The position numbers and the translations under genes were made by a program. Below, piece after piece: positions 10,603 to 51,749 of a DNA stretch of 64,000 bases. The notes beneath the pieces were generated by a model. That model saw nothing but the letters and a program-made list of their open reading frames with translations, did not search any database and was not told the origin of the DNA. The stretch's first letter is position 1; each line of letters opens with the position of its first letter. This DNA is from Podarcis erhardii (Eukaryota): assembly GCA_964252035.1 (NCBI GenBank), contig OZ176205.1; one strand, written 5' to 3'.

Positions 10603-10793
10603 CCCACTTGCTTGTTGGGGGAGTGAAATAGGAGCATTCTGTATGTTCGCAACATTGCCACCCACATTATGAAAACCATGGGCCCGAGGCATTGTTAGCT
10701 TATTTGATAACTCTGTCCCTGGTCAAAATAGCCTTGATATCTGTTGTCAGAAAAAAAAAAAATTAAGAGCAGGACCAAGTACAGATGTTCTCA

Positions 10794-11299
10794 GTCTGTA
10801 GTCCACTGGCAGCAGGAGTTCAATATGGGTATGTCTTTGAGTTAACATCTTACATCAAAAACCTGACAGTACCTAACTATCGAAGGCTTTTTACCAAGGC
10901 CAGACTGAATGTCTTCCCCTCTGCAGTGCTGGATGGTAGGTTGAGAGGAGTTCCCTACCAGGACAGACTTTGCTCGTGTGCTCAAGACATCGATTCCATA
11001 AATCATATTTTGTTACATTGTGCGAAGTATGAGCAGGCCAGGGCTGAATTGATACTACCCTTGCTGGTGCCTTTCCCGGGAAAGTCAGAGGCTCACTATG
11101 TCAGGTTCCTACTGGAAGAGCGGACAAAAGCTAGAACTTTGGCAGTGGCAAAGTTTCTATCGGTGGTTGCAAGAACAAATGAGCCCTATATTCCAAACAA
11201 AGTGCTTGATTAACCTGAAGGTAGGCTGTATGAACTCTGTATTGATTTGTAATGTTTTGTTGGTCTCTGGACCGTAATAAAGATTGTTGTTGTTGTTGT
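10794..11299 (+). mobile_element. 5'-truncated non-LTR retrotransposon (ORF2 C-terminus with CCHC knuckle; clade unresolved)
   Basis: Open frame 10785-11213 with RLCSCAQDIDSINHILLHC (C-x-C-x8-H-x4-C); AATAAA 11276-11281; (GTT)n tail; candidate TSD TGTTCTCA at 10786-10793 and 11300-11307. Confidence 0.75.
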
Positions 11300-12713: not shown

Positions 12714-13640
12714 TTATGCATGTTGTCCTTTTCGCATTTCTCCCATCTCTTTAATCTCAACCTTCTCATACTTGCCCGTCTTCCGCCTCCTGGTAACCAC
12801 GAGCACAGTTATCCCAATAACAATGGCCAGGACTACCACCACCACCACTGCAATGATGCCCGCTGTCAGGCGCTGCATAGAGAACTCTGGTGGTTTGTCA
12901 TCAACGTAGTATACTAGGATTTCTTCAATATCTAGAGGTTCGTCATTGACATAGAGACCAAACATATTATCGGGTGGGAAAATGGGTTTACCCTGGATGT
13001 CTTTTTCAAAGTAGTAAGCTACATCTGCAATGTCTACATCTCTGTAAGACTTGTCCGAAATGTTCTGCTTTAGGTCGATATGGATTAATGGCTCCTTGTA
13101 CTCAACAGCTGTGATGAACTTCGGATGGAGCATATAGCGGTTTTCAATGAGCTGTCGGAAGCTGTTTGCCACTTCTGATTCAGACAAGGGAGTTTTTCGC
13201 TCTTTGTGCTTCATCTCAATGTAGATCCAGCTTGTTCTGACCAGCTCGTTGCACCTCATGTTGAGATCCCCCTTGTCCGTCCTCCTTACCCCAGCGCTGT
13301 TCACACACCAACAAGTATCTGTCTGATTGCACTGCCTGGCTTTGAAGAAGCCCACGGTATCACATTCTGGGTTATAAAGTCCATCGTTGTCCACAAACCC
13401 ATGTTCGGGCCTGGGAAAACTTCTGCCTCTTTTGGTTTTTATTTCCGCCTTCAGCAGCAGACATTTTGGAGTCAGCGTTGAACAGTCCAGCCTCTGGTTC
13501 GAACCGCGTGCCGTACAGATGCAGCTGCCAGATTCCGAACTGCAAGACGCCAGGTTATTCGTTGGGCAAAAGCAGTCGTTCTGGGCAGCCGACGTGGCCA
13601 CAAGCATCAACACCAGGGCAGCCCCCAAAGCAGACTCCAT
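12714..13640 (-). CDS. TACSTD2: Tumor-associated calcium signal transducer 2 (TROP2), intronless, 308 aa
   Basis: ATG at 13640 (MESALGAALV signal peptide; the longer ORF call begins at a TTG). Cys-rich N-domain, thyroglobulin type-1 domain (QCN..TCWCV), TM GIIAVVVVVVLAIVIGITVLVV, tail KYEKVEIKEMGEMRK. Single exon and position next to MYSM1 favour TACSTD2 over EPCAM. Confidence 0.95.
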   Translation of the reverse strand: MESALGAALVLMLVATSAAQNDCFCPTNNLASCSSESGSCICTARGSNQRLDCSTLTPKCLLLKAEIKTKRGRSFPRPEHGFVDNDGLYNPECDTVGFFKARQCNQTDTCWCVNSAGVRRTDKGDLNMRCNELVRTSWIYIEMKHKERKTPLSESEVANSFRQLIENRYMLHPKFITAVEYKEPLIHIDLKQNISDKSYRDVDIADVAYYFEKDIQGKPIFPPDNMFGLYVNDEPLDIEEILVYYVDDKPPEFSMQRLTAGIIAVVVVVVLAIVIGITVLVVTRRRKTGKYEKVEIKEMGEMRKGQHA

Positions 13641-15871
13641 GGAGGATGAGCAAAAGAGGTCTTTAGGGAGAGACAGGGCAACACAGCAGCCTGAAGACAA
13701 GACACATCCACAACAAGAGCCTCCCGGTTTCTGAGTGATAGGGCGGGACAGCTGCCTCTCTTTCTACCATCGGACCTGCCCAACCAGTCTGGCTGGTGAC
13801 GCTCAAACAAAGCAGGTGTGTGGTGACACAGAAAACCCACAGACCAAGGGAGCTGCGCCTTCTTCAGTAGGGAGTGGCAGCAACTCTCTGCCTTCTCATA
13901 CTTCCCTACCCTCAGCCTCGCCTCCTGGTAATCACAAGTGAGGTAATTCCAGAAATAATGGCCAAGACTTCCACCACCACCACCTGCTTTTCTTTCCTCC
14001 CACTGAAGGAGGAAGCACATCATGCCAGAAACACAGAAACCAATACTACATTAAGCTCTTACAAATAGAAACGTGCCTACCCCATGGGCCAAACTATGCA
14101 TAAGTGCTGGGTTAGAGGCTACTGTCATGCCAAGCCCAGTCAGCCTCCGTTTGGTTCAGCCCAGGAGGCCTACTAAACAGGGAAGACAAACACTAGCTCC
14201 AGTGGTCAGTACTCATAGTAGACAGGAGGTAAAGTGGAAGGGATCACAGCCTCCAGAACCCCCCCTTTTCTGTTCTTTTCTTTTCTCTGTCTTTTTTTTT
14301 TTTTAAAAAAAGAATCCTTATTATGTGTCAAGTGATTCAAGATGTAATGCTGAGCCATTTCCATGGATAATCCACCAGACTATGGTAAGAAAGTCAGAGG
14401 GGGTGAGCAGACACTAGGACAGTTCTGGAAGCAGTGTTATACTTAAAATTTTTTGAATGCCCAAAGCAGCCAATCCCAACCTGGTCCTCTGTAGATTTTG
14501 TTGGGATGACAATTCCCATCACCAGCCACAGTAACTGCCTTCCTCTAATGTGGGTTTCACTGCCTTCTATCACTTTTTAAAAGTGTATACCTAATAAAAT
14601 TCAACCGTACAGTACACCAAAAGTGTGGATTGGGGTAGCTGTGATTGGCCATAGCTCCCTATTTAAGTGTGCCCTGTGTCAAATTGGGCTTTCCCTCTGA
14701 GTAATGTGTGAAGTGGCCCTCATTTCACAATCAACTCTTAAGAAATGTTGTTCTCCATACCATGTATCCCTGTTGCCTTGACCCTCATGAAGAGGCCCTG
14801 TCCAGTCCTGAAATTACATCAGGGGATTAAGATTGAAAACAACAACACAAATAACCCTATGATATCAGTGAGGGGCATTCAGCCTTTGTTGACCAGGGTG
14901 CTCTCCAAGTGTTTTGGTCTACAACTCCCATCATCTCTGGGCAGCATGGCTGTACTCACTGGGGCTAATGGGAGTTGTAGTTTCAACGCCTGGAGGGCAC
15001 CATATTGGCACAGGCTGTTTTAACACAATAACACCATTACAGTTTCTTCTTCTATTAGGTTTCAGGATTCTTTACCATTGTCCTCTGCTATGACCATCCA
15101 AACCTGCCCTCTGTACACAGAAAACACATTACTCCAGGGGTCCATAGGTCCATTATTGTGTCAAACCACGAGGGCATACGGCTTAAGCTAGTCTTTCCTG
15201 TAGGGTTCTTGTTATCCAATACGATCTTCAAAATTGGTGTTATTGCACATCCTTGATGGGTTGGCTATTTATCTCATTTTAAAACAAAACATGTTTCTGC
15301 TCCTTGTGGATGGTCACTACATAACCTGCTCCTTTTGAAATGTTCCAAGCTTAGACAATAAAAGACACAGCAACTTTCACTTGAGCTTTGCAAAGTTAAA
15401 AATACAATGATTAATATCATCAGGGAAGTTTCAGGAGGCATTTTGCAATCAAAACTCTGAGTAATTACTTCATAGGTGGCATTCTAGCAGACAGAGAGGC
15501 TAAGATCCAAGCAGCAGGCATGTCTGGTTAAATAGTCATCCTCCCCCCAAAGGAACCATGGAGACAGCAGCTTGGGTGGGGGCTACAGATCTCAAAGTGG
15601 TCAAAAAACACAATGAAAACTGCCACCCTTTGACTGCTGGGATCTCAGATGTGGGGCATGATTCAAAGAGCTGCATATGGACCTCCAGACATGCACTTTG
15701 GTTTAAAGCAGTTCCCTCCCATTCAGTTCTTCAGGGTCCTCCAAACTGCTCCACACAAAGTTGGAGAAGCTCCTGCCTTTGGATTGGTCCCTACTGAACT
15801 TCCAATAGGGCTGGCCAGTCAAAGTTCCCACTTGCTCATATGTTAGGGATCAGCTGACAGGCACTTATCTT

Positions 15872-23047: not shown

Positions 23048-23787
23048 CACAGAATCATAGAGTTGGAAGAGACCACAAGGGCCATCGAGTCCAACCCCCT
23101 GCCAAGCAGGAAACACCATCAGAGCACTCCTGACATATGGTTGTCAAGCCTCTGCTTAAAGACCTCCAAAGGAGACTCCACCACACTCCTTGGCAGCAAA
23201 TTCCACTGTCGAACAGCTCTTACTGTCAGGAAGTTCTTCCTAATGTTTAGGTGGAATCTTCTTTCTTGTAGTTTGGAACCATTGCTCTGTGTCCGCTTCT
23301 CTGGAGCAGCAGAAAACAACCTTTCTCCCTCCTCTATGTGACATCCTTTTATATATTTGAACATGGCTATCATATCACCCCTTAACCTCCTCTTCTCCAA
23401 GCTAAACATGCCCAGCTCCCTTAGCCATTCCTCATAAGGCATCGTTTCCAGGCCTTTGACCATTTTGGTTGCCCTCCTCTGGACATGTTCCAGTTTGTCA
23501 GTGTCCTTCTTGAACTGTGGTGCCCAGAACTGGACACAAGTACTCCAGGTGAGGTCTGACCAGAGCAGAATACAGTGGCACTGTTACTTCCCTTGATCTA
23601 GATGCTATATTCCTATTGATGCAGCCCAGAATTGCATTGGCTTTTTTAGCAGCCGCGTCACACTGTTTGCTCATGTCAAGTTTGTGGTCAACCAAGACTC
23701 CTAGATCCTTTTCACATGTACTGCTCTCAAGCCAGGTGTCACCCATCTTGTATTTGTGCCTCTCATTTTTTTTGCCCAAGTGCAATA
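23048..23787 (-). mobile_element. 5'-truncated CR1 LINE (ORF2 C-terminal part and 3' UTR)
   Basis: ORFs with [31 protein letters not shown] and [31 protein letters not shown]; frameshift near 23538; CR1-type terminus TCTATGATTCTGTG. Confidence 0.92.
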
Positions 23788-26070
23788 CCATTAAAAACCA
23801 ATGCACACCAAACCAAGTGGTTGCAATGTATAGTTCTCCTCCACAAAAATCAACTTTAAATGTGCCTATCACAAAGTCCCCTGGCACTATCTGTCTGCAA
23901 CTGGGCAGGTTTCTTACCTGAGGGGCACCTTTCCCAAACTGTAAAATGGTTTCCCCTTTCAGAAAAATCACTGGAATGATCCTTATGCAATTTAGCAGCA
24001 TACATTCCTTCAGAAGAGTCTGTCATACCTGTAGATTTCATTCAAACCCCCCCCCCAAAAAAACCTATAGATGTTTCTCTTTTTTAAAAAATATATCAAA
24101 TTGTAAAGGTGCCCAGCACAATAAATCCCTGACCAATTTGTCTGATTTGGCAGGCTATATGCACTCTGGAGGGGCTACTTTGCCTAAAGATATTAGCTAA
24201 TTCTGTCAAAAGAAAAGGAGAAAAAAATCCTCAGTCACTTTTGATTAACGATAGGGGGACTTAAGCTTCATTTTTCTAAAGCAACTTTGGACCCAGAACT
24301 GACTCAGACAAACTATGAAACAGTCCAATTTCCAAATAAATGCCAAATCAGGATGAAAACCAAATCTTGTGGCCGGTGCAAAACCTTAATATTTACACAC
24401 AATGAACAAGCAACAAAGTCTGCCTGGCTTTTTGACCCAAAGTTCGAAATAAGTGCAATTAGAAATTGAAATTGATCTTGTACTGTTTAGCTGAACCCCA
24501 GGACATTTAGTACTTAATTATTTGATACAAAATGATGCTCCTAAATGCAAATCTATGAGAGAAAAACAAATAAATCTGCAATGTTCGTGGGATTTTTTTC
24601 ATTTTTTTTATGTACAGAAATACTAATTTGAAGCCAAACAACATTGAAATCATCTTCACACAATTTATTGAAGGGGCAATGTGAGCAAGAAGAGTTCTTT
24701 GCATTGTTTTAATGATAAAATCCTTCTCAATTCCTGATAAAGACATCACGGGCAAATATACCTGTATTGTGCTTTTATATGAGGGTCAAATAGTCCAGTA
24801 ATTCTCTTCTGTACAAATATACAATATTTACATTGCTGTCATATGGCAATATGCAGATTTACAATAAGGATGTAAACAATAAAATTTAGAAGCTGCAATA
24901 TGATTATCACATAACTCTGTAAAACATAAACTATGGTTTTGGATATTCCAATCCAGAGGAATTCCCAGATATTATTTAGCAATATGCTAGAATTTCAATG
25001 GGGAAGATGAGGCATTGGATCACATGCAACTTGGAAGTCGTAATGGTCTAAGGAGTCAAGTAACAGGCAATATTTCAAAAGCAATGCGAATACACCTAGT
25101 GCACTATGATACAGGGTCCCTTGCATGCAGATGATTACTGAGTCAAATATATTCTAATACTGAACTAAAGGGGCTAAAGTGGAACATGTTGCACATTCAT
25201 CCATAACTTCCACAGGGTAAAAATAAAAAAAAGTCCACCTGGGATTCAAGAATAAAGTTATATAATCCTTCAGAAAATTTATTACTCCTTTGTATGTCTT
25301 TCATATTTAGTACATAGTCTGAGTTGTGATACCCAAGGGTCAAGGGAATGTTTTAAGCACAATTCTTGATTTCTGTTTGGAAAGTCTCAGCCTTCTTTCC
25401 CTAGTTCTTGAGAAATGAACAAGGCCACCCAAACTCTGCAAAGCTATACAATTAATCTGGATAGAAGAATTTGATATGAAGGATTTATTAGTCCAATATT
25501 GTTTTGCTACTGCAGACTTCTGTTGAAAGTAGTAAGCCTCTTGAATGGGCTGCGCACGCATCAAGTGAGAAACTCAAGGCTGAGATGCTCAATGAGAAAT
25601 CATATCCTTGTTGTCTTGTGGTTTTCCATCCTTTCCCGATTTCAGCAATATGCAATACAACTCAGTTTATCCACTGGACAAAATGTGCTTGCAGATACAT
25701 TAGACATTGAAATGTATAACACAGGGGTGTTCCCTAAAATGGCACAAGGTAGGCAATATAACTAATTTATGTTAACATCAAATTTCTAATAGCTCTTGGT
25801 CCAAGCAGAACACTATCACTTCAGCTATTTGGGGCAACAAATGGCGCAACTGTTTTATCCAAGTGGTGGGCTGCCAAGTGGTTCATTCATTTCTTTGCAA
25901 CACAACCATAATTTCAGAAGATTAGAAGTTATGTCAGAGATCAGATAGTTTGTCATGATTGTTTCACACTGTCTTTCAGTAACAGTCATTTTCTTGACCC
26001 GCAGTGGATGCTGTCACGTTCAAGAATTGACACTTTATAATAAAGTGAGCATTTATTCTTTTCAGCACTA

Positions 26071-43173
<17,103 letters not shown>

Positions 43174-43782
43174 GCCGACACCCGCCCGCCGACGCCGCAG
43201 CAGCCGCCAACACCGGAAGTCGCGGGAACAAAACAGGAAACGGGGCGTCCAAGGCCGGCCCAGGGAATGCGGCTCAACCATAGAGAGTTGTGAGCATGCG
43301 CCGCACGAAGCTGCGAAGCTGCGGGCGCCCTTCCTTTTGCCCTCAAGCTCTAACGGGGAATCGCTGGGCTTGGCAGGGGGCGAGGGGCGCGCGGTGGGAA
43401 TAGGAAGAGAGCTTGGTAGGAAGCGGACCGCGATGAGAGAAAAAGAGAGAAAAAGCAGGGTAGGAAGAATAGAATAGGGTATGTTCTTGTCTCTACACAC
43501 ACACATAGCTGGATGACAAGGGGGAAGCTTCCAAAATGAAAACGTAAAAGCGCAACGTAACCATACAAAAAGCAGAATTTTGCAGGGAAAGTGGGAGTCC
43601 TCGGGGAGAAATTAAAACGGGATACAATGACCTCTTCTGGTTGCAAGCCATGGATGGTGATCAAAAGCAAAGGATAGAAGTTGAAGGAGAGCTCTCGAGG
43701 CAAAAGTAACATACCGGTCCTACTTAGAATTCAGTTAAAAATACCTCTGTCAACGCCAGTAGCCACTGCCTATGTTAGATTA

Positions 43783-44021: not shown

Positions 44022-44788
44022 TATTGCCCTATTGCTCAGGTATAGAAGATTTGTAAAATGCACGCATTTCGCAGATCCTTAACGAGAAATTTCATATTTA
44101 CGACTAAACAGAGGACTGAAATCATAAATGTGGGAGTATTTTTTCAGATTATTAACTATAAAGTTGTTGAGGCACCAAGAATTGTGTGAGAGCAGACAGC
44201 ACGTCAGCTGCCTTTAATGGTGTTAGCATGACTCAGCTTTATTCTGATGTAAGCTTCTTCTGAGCTTGTTGAAGGAATAATGGGAACCAAATTCTATAAA
44301 TAAACAATATAGCAGGAAGAACAGGTACAACCATCAATTACAAATTTGGTTTTATTATTTTTTTTGTAAATTGTTCTGAAGGTTTTTGTTTTTACAATCA
44401 AGCAGTGTACTGTAGAAGTTTTAAGAAATAAGTAATACTCTTGGTGTTTCTCCATCCTTGCTTTGTTCAAACCTGCCATTGCTTAAAACAGTCACTTTCC
44501 CCCTTTCAGAACCCCCACTTCTTCACTTACTTTCCTTCTTCCATTCCTCAGCTACCCTATATGAGACAGATAATGGATGTGGATCCCACAAATTTTTCAT
44601 AGTATGTTCCCATAGAGTGTTTCACTCTTACCATATATTGCCTTCGAAATAAAGTTCCAGATTCAATGCAGTAATTCAGATATTTTATTATCAAGCAAAC
44701 ACCCATATATAAACAACAACTTAAGCTTCTCTAACTGAACAAGCTAACTGACATACCATCTCTTAAAATTTTATTTGTTTTAAAGATA

Positions 44789-45619: not shown

Positions 45620-46375
45620 GGCAGAACCCTCCTAGTACAGTAATATCTATAATCCCAACCACACCCCGACAAGCTTATGTCCAAAGCAGCTAATATCAAT
45701 TGTAATAAAACAGCACACAACAATAAAACATCAAAACAAATCAGGAACAATAAGAGATAGGCAGGCAATCTAAAACTAAAATCTAAATGCTAAGCGGTAA
45801 TCCAACTGAATAATTTTGAAGAGCAAACCAAAACAACACTGTCAAGGAGGGAGATAGCTTAGTCCCTCCATGGAATGGCATTCCATGTGCTGGGTGCCAT
45901 TACAAGAGAAGGTTAACCTTTCCATGACTGTATTTAAGTACTGTAGTAGCCTAGTACCTGTAGGCAGCATGGAATTGCATGCAGGCAAGTGAGTAGGCTT
46001 GAGGAGAAGGAGGGATGAGGGCCCCATTCCTCCTCTGTGCTCAGAATAGAAACCAAGTGCACTGGTAGTTGAGGGAAGCCCTGCCTCTGTAGGAATGCAG
46101 AGAGGCTTGCTTCGGGAGGAATGAAACACTTCTGCCAACCGCCTCCAGTGGACGGACTAGTTGTTTTCTTAAGGCTAGGACCTTTTGTGGGCTTGTTTAT
46201 AGGAACCCTCCCTCCTTTAAGATTTTGATTTAAAATAATAATAATCAAAAGTTCCAACCACTGATTTCCTGCATTGACCCTGAAATAGGGCAGCCCAGAC
46301 ACAGGTGAGAACAAGGCACTAGACAGCAATAAGAATCAACTTGTGCTTCTTACAGGTAGTTTCTTCTTAGCACAT

Positions 46376-48646
46376 TTATCTTATCAATAACATTTTCTTT
46401 TTCAAAAGAGTAACAATTTGAGCCTGGCTTTCAGTTGGGCTGGATTCTGCTACTTGAAGTGGAGTCTTCTTCAGGCTATTTGTGGCCTGTAGATTTGCTT
46501 TACCCCCCTCAGACCAGCTGACCAGTGCGCTCACACAGTTAAAATGACCGGCTCTGCAAGCACAATGCAATGGTGTGTCCTTATTGTTGTCCAGAGCATT
46601 AATGGCTGAACCGTTGCTCAAGAAGAAATGTATTAGGTCGCTGTGTCCGTGTTCTGCTGCAAGATGTAGCGGCGTCTTCCTCCAAATATTTTTGTCATCG
46701 ATATTTTTATTCTTGCCAGCAGCCAGAAGGGCCTGTAGTATCTCCACATTCCCATTGATGGCGGCATAGTGCATAGATGTGCATCCGTCCATGTCTTTGG
46801 CACCAAACCTGGACTTCTTCGCTAACAGCGCTTTCACTGCGTTAAGATGACCTCCCATGGCTGCAAGATGAAGCGGGGTCTTTTTCTCCTTGTCTGTTGC
46901 ATTGGAGTCAGCATTGTAGTTCAGCAGCAGTTCTACCATAGCAGGGTTTCCTGCTTCAGCAGCAAGATGCAGAGCTGTCTTTGCCTGCTTATCCTTAAAG
47001 TTGACATTAGCCTTTCGCCACAGCAGCTTTTGCGCAACTTCCACATGGCCCTTATAACTTGCAACGTGCAAGGGAGTGAGCAGTTCTTTAGTGACCGAAT
47101 CAGTTTTTGCACCTCCGTCAATTAATAAGTCAACTAGCCCTCCCTTATTGTGCAATGCGGCCATGTGGAGGGGGGCCTGATCTCCCTGCCCGGCAATGTT
47201 GGCATCCAATCCTTTGCTCAGGAGCATCTTTGCAATGGAGGAGGCTCCAGCTTGAACTGCCAGATGTAAAGCACTGCTTGAGTCTGGGGTCTTGTCCGTC
47301 AGGCTCGCTCCCTTTTCAATGAGAACTTTTGCTGACTCGGTCTTGCCCATCTCACATGCCACAAGCAGTGGTGTGTACTGCGCTTTGTCGAGGGCGTTTT
47401 TGTTGGTTCCTTTGTCAATTAAAGCTGCTACGATGCCATGCAGGTCCTTTTGAACGGCTTTAAAGAGAGCTGACACCATCGTAGCCGGCGACATGCCTTT
47501 GGAATAGTCCAGCAATAACTTGAAGAGAGATTGACTGTTGCTGTTAAAGGCTACATCAATGATGCTGGAATCAATGTTGGCTCCAGCTTCCAGGAGAACC
47601 TGGACAGTCTTCTCAAACCCTCGAGACACAGCATAGCCCAAAGCGGTCTGTCCTCTCTCATCCTTGGCATCCTTCAAAGCACCATTCTTTAGGATGGCTT
47701 GCACCAGCTCACTGTCATCTCTGAGAGCAGCCATGTGCAGGAAGTTGTGTTGGTTCTTGTGTCGCCTCGCCTCTTCTTTCAGGATGCTCTTCAGAACATG
47801 GGTGTGGTGGTTCTGATGGGCCAAATGAAGGGGGCTCTTGCCTTCCTGATCCAAGGTGTACATGTTGGCACCCGATTGGAGCAGCATTTTCACAGCTTCG
47901 CCGTGACCTCTCTCAGCAGCTCTGTGTAGCGGGGTTCTTCCTTTCTTATCCTTAACTTCCAGCTTAGCCCCTCTGCCGATTAGATAGTCAATTATTTCTG
48001 TATGCCCGTGAGCTGCTGCAATGTGTAGGAGGGTTTCATCTTCAGAGTTTACTGCGTTAATATCATTCTCTTTTAAGATCTTTTCTAAATAGGAAAGATT
48101 ACCTTTAGCCACAGAAACAAAGATGGAAAGAGAATTGAAAGAATTGTCTTGGGATTTCACAGCAGCTGAATCCTGTTTTACTTTATGTTTGATCTGAGTC
48201 AGCTTTTCTGGCTTAGCTAAAACCTGTCTGGGGCTATCCTTCTTTTCTTGGTGAGGATCTTTACCCTTTTGAACCCACCCTTTATCTTTCTCCAGTAGAT
48301 ACCCTATCAGTTGCCTTCTGGCATCACCAATTCTTTCATTCACATTGCTGACATAACTCCTCATGTTGTTATATAGCTGTGGCTCAATCTGTTTCAGACA
48401 TGGGTAAAAAAAGAGCCTGCAAGCTCGCTCACCTTGAGAAACCAATATATCCAGGACCCTGGAGTTCTTTGCAGTTCTTGTTCTGTAGTAGGATAAGACC
48501 ATTTTTTTCTCTGGTGTAAAAATGCCACGTTCTATCAGCCAGTTCAGAAGCTGATCAGGGTTCCTTATGCCATCTACAAGTTCATCCTTTTTAGTTCTCA
48601 GTACTTCTGTGGCATAGGGATTTGTGAACATGCCAGCTGAATACAT
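46376..48646 (-). CDS. CAIAP: CARD- and ankyrin-repeat-containing inflammasome adaptor-like protein (Caiap), intronless, 756 aa
   Basis: Uninterrupted ORF; N-terminal CARD (about aa 8-97: [42 protein letters not shown]); about 16-18 TPLH-type ankyrin repeats to the C-terminus. ORF and domains are near certain; the symbol rests on recalled Caiap architecture. Confidence 0.85.
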
Positions 48647-49759
48647 TATGTGTTTAGATTATGCACCCGCAATACATTAAACATGCCTTTGAAGTTCGGT
48701 ATTTAGCATGAGAAAGTGCAGTTTGCTCCAGTTTCTGCCAACAAATATTCTGGTGGTCCAACTGGAAATTTCAGCGACAACCACACACACGGGGGGAAAG
48801 GGAGAGCATAAACTTTTCACCTTTCGTTGTGCAACGCTGTTGCCTTCCAATTCTCTTTTCTATTCCTTAACAACAGACTGGAGTTGACGAATTGAAACAA
48901 AACAAAACTCAGTAAAAATATTCCAGTAAAAATGGTCGCATTGCAAGAACTTGCAAGATAAAATCGGGAGGAAGTTTTCAAAGTTGGTAGCTAAGCTGTT
49001 GATGGATAGAAACTTTAAAAAAAAAATGTATTTGGCATGTGTGACCCATCTGTCAGACATGTCAGAAGAAAAGCAGCAGGCTAGTAACTGTTGCTATGTA
49101 ATTAGCCTTTGTGTAACATTAAGATAAAATTGTATACCCGTCAGTTAGTTACACAGCGGCATATCACACAGTGATCAAAAGCTGCAGGGCAAGTAGCTAA
49201 GAATGAGTTTAATGTTTCAAAAAAAGTAGATCCCACATTTATTTTATTTATTTAGAAAAATGCATTAGCCACTTTTTTTAAAAAAAGACTATCCTAAGCA
49301 ATGTACATACAACAATAAAACTTTTCAGACAGCAACATAATGGCATGCTATGAAAGGGCCATATAGGTGAAACATGAAAGAAAATCAAGAAAGAATACAT
49401 TTATTTTGCCTTTCCCAACATGTAATAATTCAATCAGTGCTGTGAGCTCATGGTGTTTCCATAAAGGCAAATTCTCATTGAAAACACATCTGTCCTCAAG
49501 GTGGAATATTTTAACAACTGAGGAATTTTCATTAAAGCGATATGGGCAAATTATAATGACGGCTTCTAATAAACAGAAGATTAGCAGAACAATCTTACAT
49601 AGCAATTGCACCAGGAGTAAAGTTGCATCACTTCTATTTTATATTTATGGACATATTCATAGTCTGCCCTCTCACAAAATATCAGGGCAGTGCACAGCAA
49701 TATAACAAAATATTTTTTAAAAAGCAGTATGGAATAATCATTAAAATAACTGGCTACTC

Positions 49760-50096: not shown

Positions 50097-50220
50097 TAAG
50101 GTAACCAGACATCCCCATTTCCTAGGGACAGTCCCCAGATTTACAAATCAGTCCCCATACAAAATCCATTGAAGTTGAAAAGTGTCCCCGGATTCATTGG
50201 AAAAACATCTGGTAACCTTA
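50097..50220. mobile_element. hAT MITE, 124 bp
   Basis: Perfect 13-bp TIR TAAGGTAACCAGA / TCTGGTAACCTTA; perfect 8-bp TSD CCCAAAAC. Confidence 0.9.
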
Positions 50221-51749
50221 CCCAAAACCATCAGGCAGCAACAACTTTCCTCCTTCTACTAGCACCCCTCCAGGCAGGGGCTCCATTTTCCTTATGCTGC
50301 TCACAAGCAGTGCTGGGAACGCCACAGAATGGGATGGCACAACACAGAGTGTCAAGCTCAGAACGTCCTCCCCTCCCTTTGATAACTTCACAGATAAAAA
50401 TTAACAAGCAGTTGATAGATTTATAGTCTTTTTATTACAGCTTCATGTTGCGATCACAAAATAGGCAGCTCTCCTCAAGGAGGGCAGTTCCTCATTTGTG
50501 GAGGAAGTTCCTCAAAGAAAGTGGGATATATATTTTAAAAGAAATGTTCACATAGAACAAATGGGTCACAATTGTCACACTTTGCAGCCAGTGTTTCCCA
50601 CTTCCTTTGCTTGCCTGTGTGCGATGTGGTTGTTGGATCGGAGGGGGGGGTTATTGTTGGGTTTCGAGGTTCCCCCCTAGAAGTGAGGTTCTCAAATTCC
50701 CCTATATGTTCTGGAAGCCGGTTGTCTGTGGATGCTTCCAGACTACCATCACTTTTGGATCTCTCACCCATTATAATAGATGCCAATTATGTTCCTTCAC
50801 GAAATAACATGGCCCTTCTTCTTAACCCACTTCCAAGAAGATGGGTACATCGTGGTAAACAGCAACAGCACTACAGGCTTCTCACGCTTAAAAAGTAGGC
50901 TTTTTGCAGTAAGAAATGTGATGGGGGGAAGCAGTAGAAAGTGTGGGATAATTCCCACTTGATGGCAGTGTTGTATAACCTCTGCAGAAATGTTGTACAA
51001 ACCAATGAGACCAAATGCCCAACAAACAGGTCTCTGGAAACCACTCCTGTGTCTGCAAATCCCCCCACCTCTTTCCTGGTTTCCCCATCTGGCCTTTGGG
51101 AGCTCTAGGCATGGGGCAAGTGGGGACGTGCCTTCAGCTGCAGTCTCCCTATGTAGGATTTATTTACCTGGTGTGCTGCAATTGGGTGATGAGTTACACC
51201 ATATCCTATGCCTGGCCCAGCAAAGTGAGCAGGATGGTCATTGACACAAGGAGGTTTTCTTTTCCCCTTTTATCTTTTTAAAGAAGTTTCTCTCCCACTG
51301 GCGTCAGCAGGAGGGAAACTCTTTGCATCTTTAACTGTTTATGGCATGTTTATGGCATGGTCACTGGAGCCTAGAGAAGTATAGCATATCACGTAACTGT
51401 GCACTTCTCTGGGCCACCCCATCCTGACTCCACTCCACAGGCAGATCTTCACTGGCAGAAAACCTACACAAGCCAAACTATTCTGCTGATGTCAGATTTC
51501 ATCAGCGTATCTGTCATGTCTGCACCATCCCTGGCATTCTGCTTATGGTGCTGAGTTTCTGTCAAATCCTCAGTCAGCAATGGTCAAATACAGGACTGTG
51601 TCCTGAATATAGTTTTTCCTAGAACTATCATAGGCAGATAGTAGAAAATTGGTGGGGTTTTTTGAAAAATGGATTGAATAACTAAAGGAGATAAGTGGCT
51701 AATTGGGATCCAGAACAATCTTAGAGCATTTTTGTATTTCTTCCTATAG

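What the first reader, a model, noticed from the sequence alone, without database searches (positions are those of the whole stretch)
46376..48646. Intact intronless CARD-ankyrin inflammasome adaptor (Caiap-like) in a reptile, in an interval where placental mammals have no known coding gene
Seen: a 756-aa unbroken ORF with a CARD, a basic linker and about 16-18 ankyrin repeats, and no kinase, NACHT or protease domain. Recalled: zebrafish Caiap has this architecture, promotes caspase-1 activation and bacterial clearance, and was reported from fish to marsupials but not placentals. Inference: reptiles keep an ASC-parallel sensor/adaptor arm, with the ankyrins as ligand or scaffold surface and the CARD as filament nucleator. 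To my knowledge it is functionally uncharacterised in squamates. The architecture itself is not new.
Basis: partly seen in the sequence, partly recalled or inferred. Interest (0 to 1): 0.8.

Follow-up and report, generated by a model that had tools for sequence, protein, structure and literature searches.

The report
Lizard copy of known Caiap gene
This is an intact lizard copy of Caiap, a known CARD-plus-ankyrin inflammasome helper protein that databases already annotate in lizards and a 2017 paper already lists for reptiles, so the gene itself is ordinary.

Summary
Window 46376-48646 (minus strand) carries one unbroken 756-aa ORF. It has a CARD (Pfam 39 bits against a cut-off of 23.9), a disordered basic linker and about 16-18 ankyrin units, with no kinase, NACHT or protease domain.

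It is the 1:1 orthologue of zebrafish Caiap:
- 51% identity over 99% of the length.
- The gene tree follows the species tree.
- It lies directly upstream of MYSM1 on the same strand, as in other squamates and in birds.
- dN/dS against six squamates is 0.15-0.19.

NCBI already annotates the same 756-aa protein in Podarcis, Lacerta and Zootoca (96-97% identical). Tyrkalska et al. 2017 already listed reptile orthologues and the absence from placentals. A marsupial probe found eight marsupial clusters, then sauropsids, and no placental protein.

There Caiap needs Asc, its ankyrins bind active caspase, and its CARD self-oligomerises.

Three side results are more interesting than the gene:
- Lamprey and lungfish have orthologues, although the 2017 paper reported none.
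- The marsupial stem branch is very long.
- Songbird Caiap is still under purifying selection, although songbirds are reported to lack ASC and caspase-1.

Verdict: already known, low interest.

The parts
46376..48646 (-). Complete Caiap coding sequence: 756 codons plus the stop at 46376-46378, in one uninterrupted block
   Evidence: ORF list. Full-length orthologue hits: 97% to lacertids, 51% to zebrafish Caiap. dN/dS 0.15-0.19 against six squamates.
48329..48613 (-). CARD, residues 12-106 (Pfam match 14-96)
   Evidence: Pfam PF00619 at 39 bits, cut-off 23.9. NOD1 CARD is the best solved relative, E 2e-5. The model shows a six-helix bundle with a broken helix 1. dN/dS 0.09-0.27.
48284..48325 (-). 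Post-CARD conserved segment, residues 108-121 (short helix 113-120). It is the most conserved stretch of the protein across vertebrates.
   Evidence: Mean majority fraction is 0.90, against 0.76 for the CARD. R111, Q112, L113, G115, Y116, L117, L118 and E119 are invariant in 38 vertebrates. It is modelled with low confidence, pLDDT 52-55.
48131..48283 (-). Disordered basic linker, residues 122-172
   Evidence: pLDDT 29-34. Conservation 0.36, 12 K/R against 6 D/E, pI 9.9. dN/dS 0.23-0.55.
46379..48130 (-). Ankyrin-repeat solenoid, residues 173-756: 18 helix-pair units, about 16 of them canonical repeats
   Evidence: Pfam Ank_2, Ank, Ank_4 and Ank_5 at E 1e-110 to 1e-61. Helix pairs in the model, pLDDT mostly 90 or more. 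Concave-groove positions are more conserved than convex ones: 0.68 against 0.59, p 0.02.
48647..48900 (-). Conserved 5' flank (5' UTR and/or promoter). It holds a candidate splice acceptor (pyrimidine tract plus AG at 48762-48763) conserved in 5 of 7 squamates.
   Evidence: The seven-squamate alignment has 66% mean column identity. Sequence. The RNA contig whose coordinates are listed reaches only to 48694, and mean depth is zero from 48749 to 49142. The exon structure of the 5' UTR is not resolved.
45694..46375 (-). 3' untranslated flank covered by RNA-library contigs. Candidate poly(A) signals lie further down at 44775 and 44689.
   Evidence: Contig pieces at 45694-45975 and 46178-46341 from a close relative's RNA libraries. 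AATAAA positions.
42501..43500 (-). Context: CpG-rich promoter region of the downstream neighbour MYSM1, which bounds the Caiap transcription unit
   Evidence: GC 0.56-0.66 and CpG observed/expected 0.62-0.94. A MYSM1 SWIRM exon lies at 36559-37311. MYSM1 (Myb+SWIRM+JAB) follows Caiap on the same strand in 3 squamates and 4 birds.

Best explanation
[quoted passage not shown] It is intact, kept under purifying selection, and sits in its ancestral place just upstream of MYSM1. Inferred from zebrafish: it most likely works as it does there. After an upstream sensor and ASC have activated caspase-1, the concave face of the ankyrin solenoid binds the active p20/p10 protease. The N-terminal CARD then joins Caiap molecules to one another. 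This holds active caspase-1 in large, stable complexes and prolongs or strengthens its activity against intracellular bacteria. On this reading it is a downstream stabiliser, not a sensor and not an ASC substitute. I put identity at about 0.97 and this mechanism in lizards at about 0.5-0.6.
For: Identity: CARD plus ANK and nothing else. Best hits are named Caiap orthologues ordered by phylogeny: lacertids 96-97%, other squamates 73-85%, turtles and alligator 70-72%, birds 62-67%, amphibians 57-63%, zebrafish Caiap 51% over 99% of the length. In the tree the window groups with Zootoca (support 100) and then with Rhineura (99), and the whole gene tree mirrors the species tree, far from ANKK1, ANKRD52 and inversin. 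The same-strand MYSM1 neighbour is present in squamates and birds. Function retained: dN/dS 0.15-0.19 overall and 0.09-0.27 in the CARD. Five annotated lacertids (six sequence versions) and the window are all 756 aa with no indel. RNA-library contigs of a close relative cover the ORF and 3' flank but not the upstream flank. Mechanism: in zebrafish the ANK domain pulls down wild-type but not catalytically dead Caspa, the CARD mediates self-oligomerisation, and Asc is required (PMC5662874). Concave-groove ANK positions are more conserved than convex ones (0.68 against 0.59, p 0.02), most strongly in the C-terminal repeats, as expected for a conserved protein-binding groove.
Against: Nothing functional has been tested in any reptile. 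Zebrafish Caspa has a PYD prodomain, whereas tetrapod caspase-1 has a CARD, so a direct CARD-CARD contact that cannot occur in zebrafish is possible in lizards. Songbirds, reported to have lost both ASC and caspase-1 (PMC11258412), keep an intact Caiap with dN/dS 0.28 overall and 0.06 in the CARD, no weaker than in other birds. Part of the constraint on the gene therefore cannot come from caspase-1 or ASC. Zebrafish Caiap acts downstream of flagellin, yet the same paper did not find NLRC4 in the lacertid Podarcis muralis. The expression evidence is thin: low-depth contigs whose RNA status is guessed, and no reads in two raw RNA-seq runs.
Confidence: 0.6

Rival explanations
1. Caiap's main conserved job does not depend on caspase-1 or ASC. 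The ankyrin groove holds another partner, such as another caspase or a signalling protein, and the CARD couples it to other CARD proteins. The caspase-1 effect seen in zebrafish would be one output among several.
For: Songbirds are reported to lack ASC and caspase-1 (PMC11258412). They still keep a full-length CARD+ANK Caiap next to MYSM1 with dN/dS 0.28 overall and 0.06 in the CARD. Lampreys, for which that paper reports no identifiable ASC, also have a CARD+ANK orthologue. The most conserved segment, residues 108-121, has no assigned role.
Against: The only experiments (zebrafish) tie it to Asc and Caspa. The losses in songbirds come from annotation-based searches that I did not re-test. Pairwise dN/dS cannot exclude a recent relaxation of constraint.
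Confidence: 0.25
2. One reading: an ASC-parallel sensor/adaptor. The ankyrins sense a ligand or scaffold a sensor, and the CARD directly nucleates caspase-1 CARD filaments without ASC.
For: Tetrapod caspase-1 carries a CARD, so a direct CARD-CARD contact is structurally possible (general knowledge of the family). Birds mostly lack ASC yet keep Caiap. The CARD is under strong constraint.
Against: In zebrafish Caiap needs Asc, and ΔCARD Caiap still binds and forms specks with active Caspa. Songbirds keep Caiap without caspase-1. No ligand-binding evidence exists. The closest solved CARD by sequence is NOD1's, not a caspase-1, ASC or NLRC4 CARD.
Confidence: 0.12
3. The ORF is a generic ankyrin protein or a decaying, non-functional relic that only looks like Caiap.
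For: Older NCBI names for the same proteins were 'ankyrin-3-like' or 'ankyrin-1-like'. Two raw RNA-seq runs gave no reads.
Against: The ORF is full-length and intact with a scoring CARD. Orthologues align end to end. dN/dS is 0.15-0.19. Length is conserved at exactly 756 aa in lacertids. RNA-library contigs lie over the ORF.
Confidence: 0.02

Closest known systems
Zebrafish Caiap (Tyrkalska et al. 2017, Front Immunol 8:1375; PMC5662874)
   Same: N-terminal CARD, variable linker, about 16 ANK repeats and no other domain. 51% identity over 99% of the length. One uninterrupted ORF. CARD scores are similar: 39 bits here, 44.7 in zebrafish.
   Different: 756 aa against 744 aa. The lizard's effector caspase-1 has a CARD prodomain, whereas zebrafish Caspa has a PYD (paper). 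No functional data exist for the lizard. Whether the lizard gene has the separate 5' non-coding exon implied by the zebrafish 'two exons, single ORF' structure is unresolved.
Annotated lacertid proteins 'CARD- and ANK-domain containing inflammasome adapter protein-like' (Podarcis muralis XP_028589153.2, P. raffonei, P. lilfordi, Lacerta agilis, Zootoca vivipara)
   Same: All are 756 aa, 95.6-97.2% identical to the window protein, without indels.
   Different: 21-33 substitutions each, mostly in the ANK region. The window's exact sequence is not in the protein collection, so it comes from another lacertid species or assembly.
NOD1 CARD (PDB 2dbd, 2b1w, 4jqw, 2nsn)
   Same: Closest solved structure by sequence to residues 5-100, E 2e-5.
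   Different: NOD1 continues into NACHT and LRR domains. Here the CARD is followed by a conserved short helix, a basic linker and ankyrins. There is no NACHT hit.
RIPK4 / ANKK1 (kinase plus ankyrin repeats)
   Same: A C-terminal run of ankyrin repeats, about 32-33% identical to marsupial Caiap over the ANK part only.
   Different: They have an N-terminal protein kinase domain instead of a CARD. No kinase family is hit here. ANKK1 sits on a distant outgroup branch.
ICEBERG / INCA (CARD-only regulators of caspase-1)
   Same: Small regulators that act directly on caspase-1. The Caiap authors themselves draw this comparison.
   Different: They bind through CARD-CARD contacts and inhibit. Caiap binds the active protease through its ankyrins and promotes activity.

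Membership tests
[quoted passage not shown] | N-terminal CARD | tested here: met
   PF00619 at 39.0 bits against a cut-off of 23.9, residues 14-96. Only CARDs are hit in the PDB. Six-helix bundle with a broken H1.
[quoted passage not shown] | About 16 C-terminal ankyrin repeats and no further domain | tested here: met
   ANK families at E down to 1e-110, with nothing else above threshold. 18 helix pairs including caps.
[quoted passage not shown] | Full-length orthology to zebrafish Caiap, with a gene tree that follows the species tree | tested here: met
   51% identity and 99% coverage to Danio rerio Caiap. The tree places the window with Zootoca (100), then Rhineura (99), inside squamates, and the clade is separated from ANKK1, ANKRD52 and inversin.
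[quoted passage not shown] | Conserved genomic position | tested here: met
   Directly upstream of MYSM1 on the same strand in the window, in Rhineura, Elgaria and Crotalus and in four birds. Zebrafish and marsupial synteny not shown: MYSM1 is not within 10 kb in Dromiciops.
[quoted passage not shown] | Coding sequence in a single exon | tested here: met
   Uninterrupted ORF here and contiguous CDS in 11 other species. The zebrafish gene has two exons with a single ORF.
[quoted passage not shown] | The ANK domain binds catalytically active caspase-1/Caspa, the CARD self-oligomerises, and Asc is required for bacterial resistance | not testable with these tools
   Known only from zebrafish experiments. 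The indirect support here is a more conserved concave groove.
[quoted passage not shown] | Transcribed at a low level, in immune cells | tested here: inconclusive
   Low-depth contigs from RNA libraries of a close relative cover 46178-48694, and mean depth is zero from 48749 to 49142. Two raw RNA-seq runs gave no reads. Tissue is unknown.
RIPK4 / ANKK1 | N-terminal protein kinase domain | tested here: not met
   No Pkinase hit at E up to 0.1. The N-terminus is a CARD.
NLR (NOD1-like) | Central NACHT NTPase domain | tested here: not met
   No NACHT hit. Only the CARD resembles NOD1.

The most novel reading that the evidence does not exclude
Caiap has an ancestral function that needs neither ASC nor caspase-1. 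It predates the lamprey-gnathostome split. It also stays under purifying selection in songbirds, which are reported to have lost both partners. In sauropsids, lizards included, it may therefore scaffold a different protease or CARD partner. It could be one of the missing links in bird inflammasome-like signalling that Billman et al. 2024 asked about without mentioning Caiap.
Probability: 0.25. Interest if true: 0.6.

Novelty: already known. Interest (0 to 1): 0.2.

Why it matters
The gene itself adds nothing new. Reptile Caiap orthologues were published in 2017, and this protein is already named in five lacertid genome annotations. The comparative picture gathered on the way may be of more use. 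The family is older than reported, because lamprey and lungfish copies exist. It evolved very fast on the marsupial stem, in the lineage whose placental sister group lacks the gene. It is also conserved in birds said to lack its only known partners. Together these make it a testable question whether Caiap is really a caspase-1 stabiliser only. Lizards have both a CARD-caspase-1 and ASC, so they would be a reasonable tetrapod system for that test.

Tried and rejected
1. The full-length search of the 50%-identity representative library was swamped by giant ankyrin proteins. Only the single-stretch hits of about 750-820 aa were useful, and they had to be named through.
2. The look-up of the Zootoca protein's contig failed because it is not on record, so the closest CDS used for dN/dS was Rhineura.
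3. The raw RNA-seq runs X20 and X21 gave no reads on the gene. They only lit up a repeat at 50097-50223. The 5' UTR exon could therefore not be mapped, and read laying is limited to one call.
4. Literature searches on 'Caiap' after 2017 returned mostly unrelated words (plant cultivars, place names) and reviews. None reported work on reptiles.
5. RIPK4/ANKK1 kinship was rejected: no kinase domain and a distant outgroup position.
6. Generic 'ankyrin-3-like' was rejected as an outdated automatic name.
7. A NOD1-like role for the CARD was considered because NOD1 is the nearest solved CARD. It was not pursued, since 27 bits says little about partner choice.
8. I did not test the placental MYSM1-JUN interval for a pseudogene. 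No vertebrate genome collection is on hand, and I did not work with human sequence.

Full report
OBSERVATION. One search lists one ORF at exactly 46376..48646 on the minus strand. It is 756 aa and starts with ATG. An in-frame TAA lies 15 nt upstream of that ATG. The next longest ORF in the whole window is 328 aa, so this is not a chance ORF.

Pfam finds a CARD at residues 14-96 (39.0 bits against a curated cut-off of 23.9). It also finds ankyrin families at E-values from 1e-110 to 1e-61, and no kinase, NACHT, death-domain or protease family. A sequence search of solved structures with residues 1-134 returns only CARDs, with NOD1's best at E 2e-5.

An AlphaFold2 model built on 38 orthologues (mean pLDDT 83.5) shows four parts:
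- A six-helix bundle at 12-106 with the kinked first helix typical of CARDs.
- A short helix at 113-120.
- A disordered stretch at 122-172.
- 18 helix pairs from 173 to 755, which is about 16 canonical repeats plus caps and a few irregular units.

The linker has 12 K/R against 6 D/E and a pI of 9.9.

WHAT IT IS. The protein search returns full-length hits that NCBI names 'CARD- and ANK-domain containing inflammasome adapter protein'. Their identity falls in step with phylogeny:
- Lacertid 97%.
- Rhineura 85%, Elgaria 80%, Sceloporus 79%, Anolis 77%.
- Snakes 72-76%.
- Turtles and alligator 70-72%.
- Birds 62-67%.
- Amphibians 57-63%.
- Lungfish 59%, coelacanth 58%.
- Sharks 52-55%.
- Zebrafish Caiap 51% over 99% of the length.

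The 90% cluster of the top hit holds the 756-aa proteins of Podarcis muralis, P. raffonei, P. lilfordi, Lacerta agilis and Zootoca vivipara. These differ from the window protein at 21-33 positions and have no indels. The window's exact sequence is not in the collection, so it belongs to another lacertid species or assembly.

A maximum-likelihood tree puts the window with Zootoca (support 100), then with Rhineura (99), inside squamates. The whole Caiap clade reproduces the vertebrate species tree and is far from ANKK1, ANKRD52 and inversin. This is single-copy orthology.

CONTEXT. The window also holds an intronless EpCAM/Trop-2-type ORF at 12714-13700 (minus strand) and a MYSM1 SWIRM exon at 36559-37311 (minus strand). 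A CpG-rich region lies at 42.5-43.5 kb. It fits the MYSM1 promoter, about 3 kb downstream of the Caiap stop.

In Rhineura, Elgaria and Crotalus, and in zebra finch, crow, loon and falcon, the Caiap CDS is likewise one uninterrupted block. In each it is followed on the same strand by a Myb+SWIRM+JAB gene, which is MYSM1. JUN is not in the window.

That the human MYSM1-JUN interval has no coding gene is my recollection of the human map, not something tested here.

IS IT FUNCTIONAL. Pairwise Nei-Gojobori dN/dS of the window CDS against six squamates:

| Region | dN/dS |
|---|---|
| Whole CDS | 0.15-0.19 |
| CARD | 0.09-0.27 |
| Ankyrins | 0.13-0.17 |
| Linker | 0.23-0.55 |

Contigs from RNA libraries of a close relative cover 46178-48694 and part of the 3' flank (45694-45975) at low depth. 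Mean depth is zero over 48749-49142 upstream. This argues for transcription rather than DNA carry-over. However, the libraries' RNA status is guessed, and two raw RNA-seq runs gave no reads on the gene.

The 250 nt upstream of the ATG are conserved among squamates (66% column identity). They contain a candidate acceptor (AG at 48762-48763) behind a pyrimidine tract. Zebrafish caiap has two exons with a single ORF. Whether the lizard gene has a separate 5' non-coding exon stays open. 'Intronless' is shown only for the coding part.

HOW IT PROBABLY WORKS. The only experiments are in zebrafish (PMC5662874). There Caiap is needed for inflammasome-dependent resistance to Salmonella, acts downstream of flagellin, and requires Asc and Caspa. 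Both wild-type and ΔCARD Caiap co-precipitate and form specks with wild-type Caspa, but not with catalytically dead Caspa. The CARD drives self-oligomerisation. The authors conclude that Caiap stabilises active caspase in high-molecular-weight complexes.

By orthology this is the best-supported mechanism for the lizard protein. It is an inference. Two things computed here bear on it:
- In ten canonical repeats, the positions that line the concave groove are more conserved across 38 vertebrates than convex-face positions (0.68 against 0.59, one-sided p 0.02). Within squamates they also have lower dN (0.111 against 0.169). The effect is strongest in the C-terminal repeats. This is what a conserved protein-binding groove predicts.
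- The most conserved stretch of all is not the CARD but residues 108-121 just after it (0.90; eight invariant residues). No role has been assigned to it.

It remains possible in tetrapods, because their caspase-1 carries a CARD.

A COMPLICATION WORTH NOTING. Billman et al. 2024 (PMC11258412) report that birds have mostly lost ASC and that songbirds have also lost caspase-1. The paper never mentions Caiap.

Yet songbirds keep a full-length Caiap next to MYSM1, and its CARD scores well (46.9 bits). Zebra finch against crow gives dN/dS 0.28 overall and 0.06 in the CARD region. That is no weaker than loon against falcon, at 0.33 and 0.12. If the reported losses are real, part of the selective constraint on Caiap cannot come from ASC or caspase-1.

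The same paper did not find NLRC4 in Podarcis muralis, although zebrafish Caiap acts downstream of flagellin. I did not re-test those absences. For these reasons I give the zebrafish mechanism only about 0.5-0.6 in lizards. I keep a caspase-1-independent role as the main rival, at about 0.25.

DISTRIBUTION. The 2017 paper reported no orthologue in placentals, lamprey or lungfish.
- The representative search plus name look-up shows 817-aa orthologues in four lamprey species. They are 45% identical and align end to end, and the CARD scores 36.6 bits.
- There is a 756-aa orthologue in the lungfish Protopterus, with a CARD at 43.3 bits.
- Probing with the marsupial Dromiciops protein returns eight marsupial clusters at 70-100% identity. 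It then drops straight to sauropsids at 45-47%, then to fishes, then to generic ankyrin proteins. No placental and no monotreme protein appears.

The search covers only predicted proteins of 415-1320 aa that share words with the query, so it cannot exclude pseudogenes or unannotated genes.

The marsupial stem branch is 0.89 substitutions per site, against 0.03-0.17 for neighbouring internal branches. Marsupial CARDs score lower, at 22-35 bits.

NOVELTY AND VERDICT. However, reptile Caiap orthologues (Anolis, garter snake, king cobra, alligator, turtles) were listed in 2017, and NCBI already names this protein in five lacertids. The gene is already known. Its function in squamates is untested, as for most lizard genes. 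Interest is low for the finding itself. The side observations on lamprey and lungfish presence, marsupial acceleration and songbird retention are modestly interesting leads.

Noticed in passing
P0149 (lampreys), P0093 (Protopterus); Lampreys (Lampetra, Petromyzon, Lethenteron; 817 aa, 45% identical, CARD 36.6 bits) and the lungfish Protopterus (756 aa, 59%) have full-length Caiap orthologues. The 2017 paper reported none in lamprey or lungfish. The family therefore predates the cyclostome-gnathostome split.
   Followed up: partly
L008, L009 (songbirds) against L010, L011; Songbird Caiap is intact, lies next to MYSM1, and is under purifying selection (dN/dS 0.28; CARD region 0.06). Billman et al. 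2024 report that songbirds have lost ASC and caspase-1, and that paper does not mention Caiap.
   Followed up: partly
Marsupial proteins P0144, P0279-P0285; The marsupial stem branch is very long (0.89 substitutions per site). Marsupial Caiap is only 44-47% identical to sauropsid Caiap, and its CARD scores weaker (22-35 bits). No monotreme or placental protein was found with a marsupial probe.
   Followed up: partly
window 48284-48325 (-), residues 108-121: A short segment right after the CARD is the most conserved part of the protein (eight invariant residues from sharks to lizards). It is modelled with low confidence and has no assigned function. It may be a binding motif or a seventh helix packing on the CARD.
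   Followed up: partly
window 50097-50223: A short interspersed repeat. RNA contigs and raw reads pile up here at depths of hundreds, with many variants and loose ends on both sides. This is typical of a high-copy SINE-like element transcribed from many loci.
   Followed up: no
window 12714-13700 (-): A complete intronless 328-aa EpCAM/Trop-2-type ORF (EpCAM_N, thyroglobulin type-1, EPCAM-Trop-2_C). It fits TACSTD2 beside MYSM1, as I recall from the human map.
   Followed up: partly
window 23498-24001 (-) and 10785-11213 (+): ORFs whose translations look like fragments of LINE reverse-transcriptase or C-terminal regions. They are probably decayed retrotransposon copies.
   Followed up: no
window 48629-48646 (-): There are two in-frame ATGs (Met1 and Met6), both before the CARD. 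The Sceloporus annotation starts at a later ATG than those of other squamates, so the true start codon is uncertain by a few residues.
   Followed up: no
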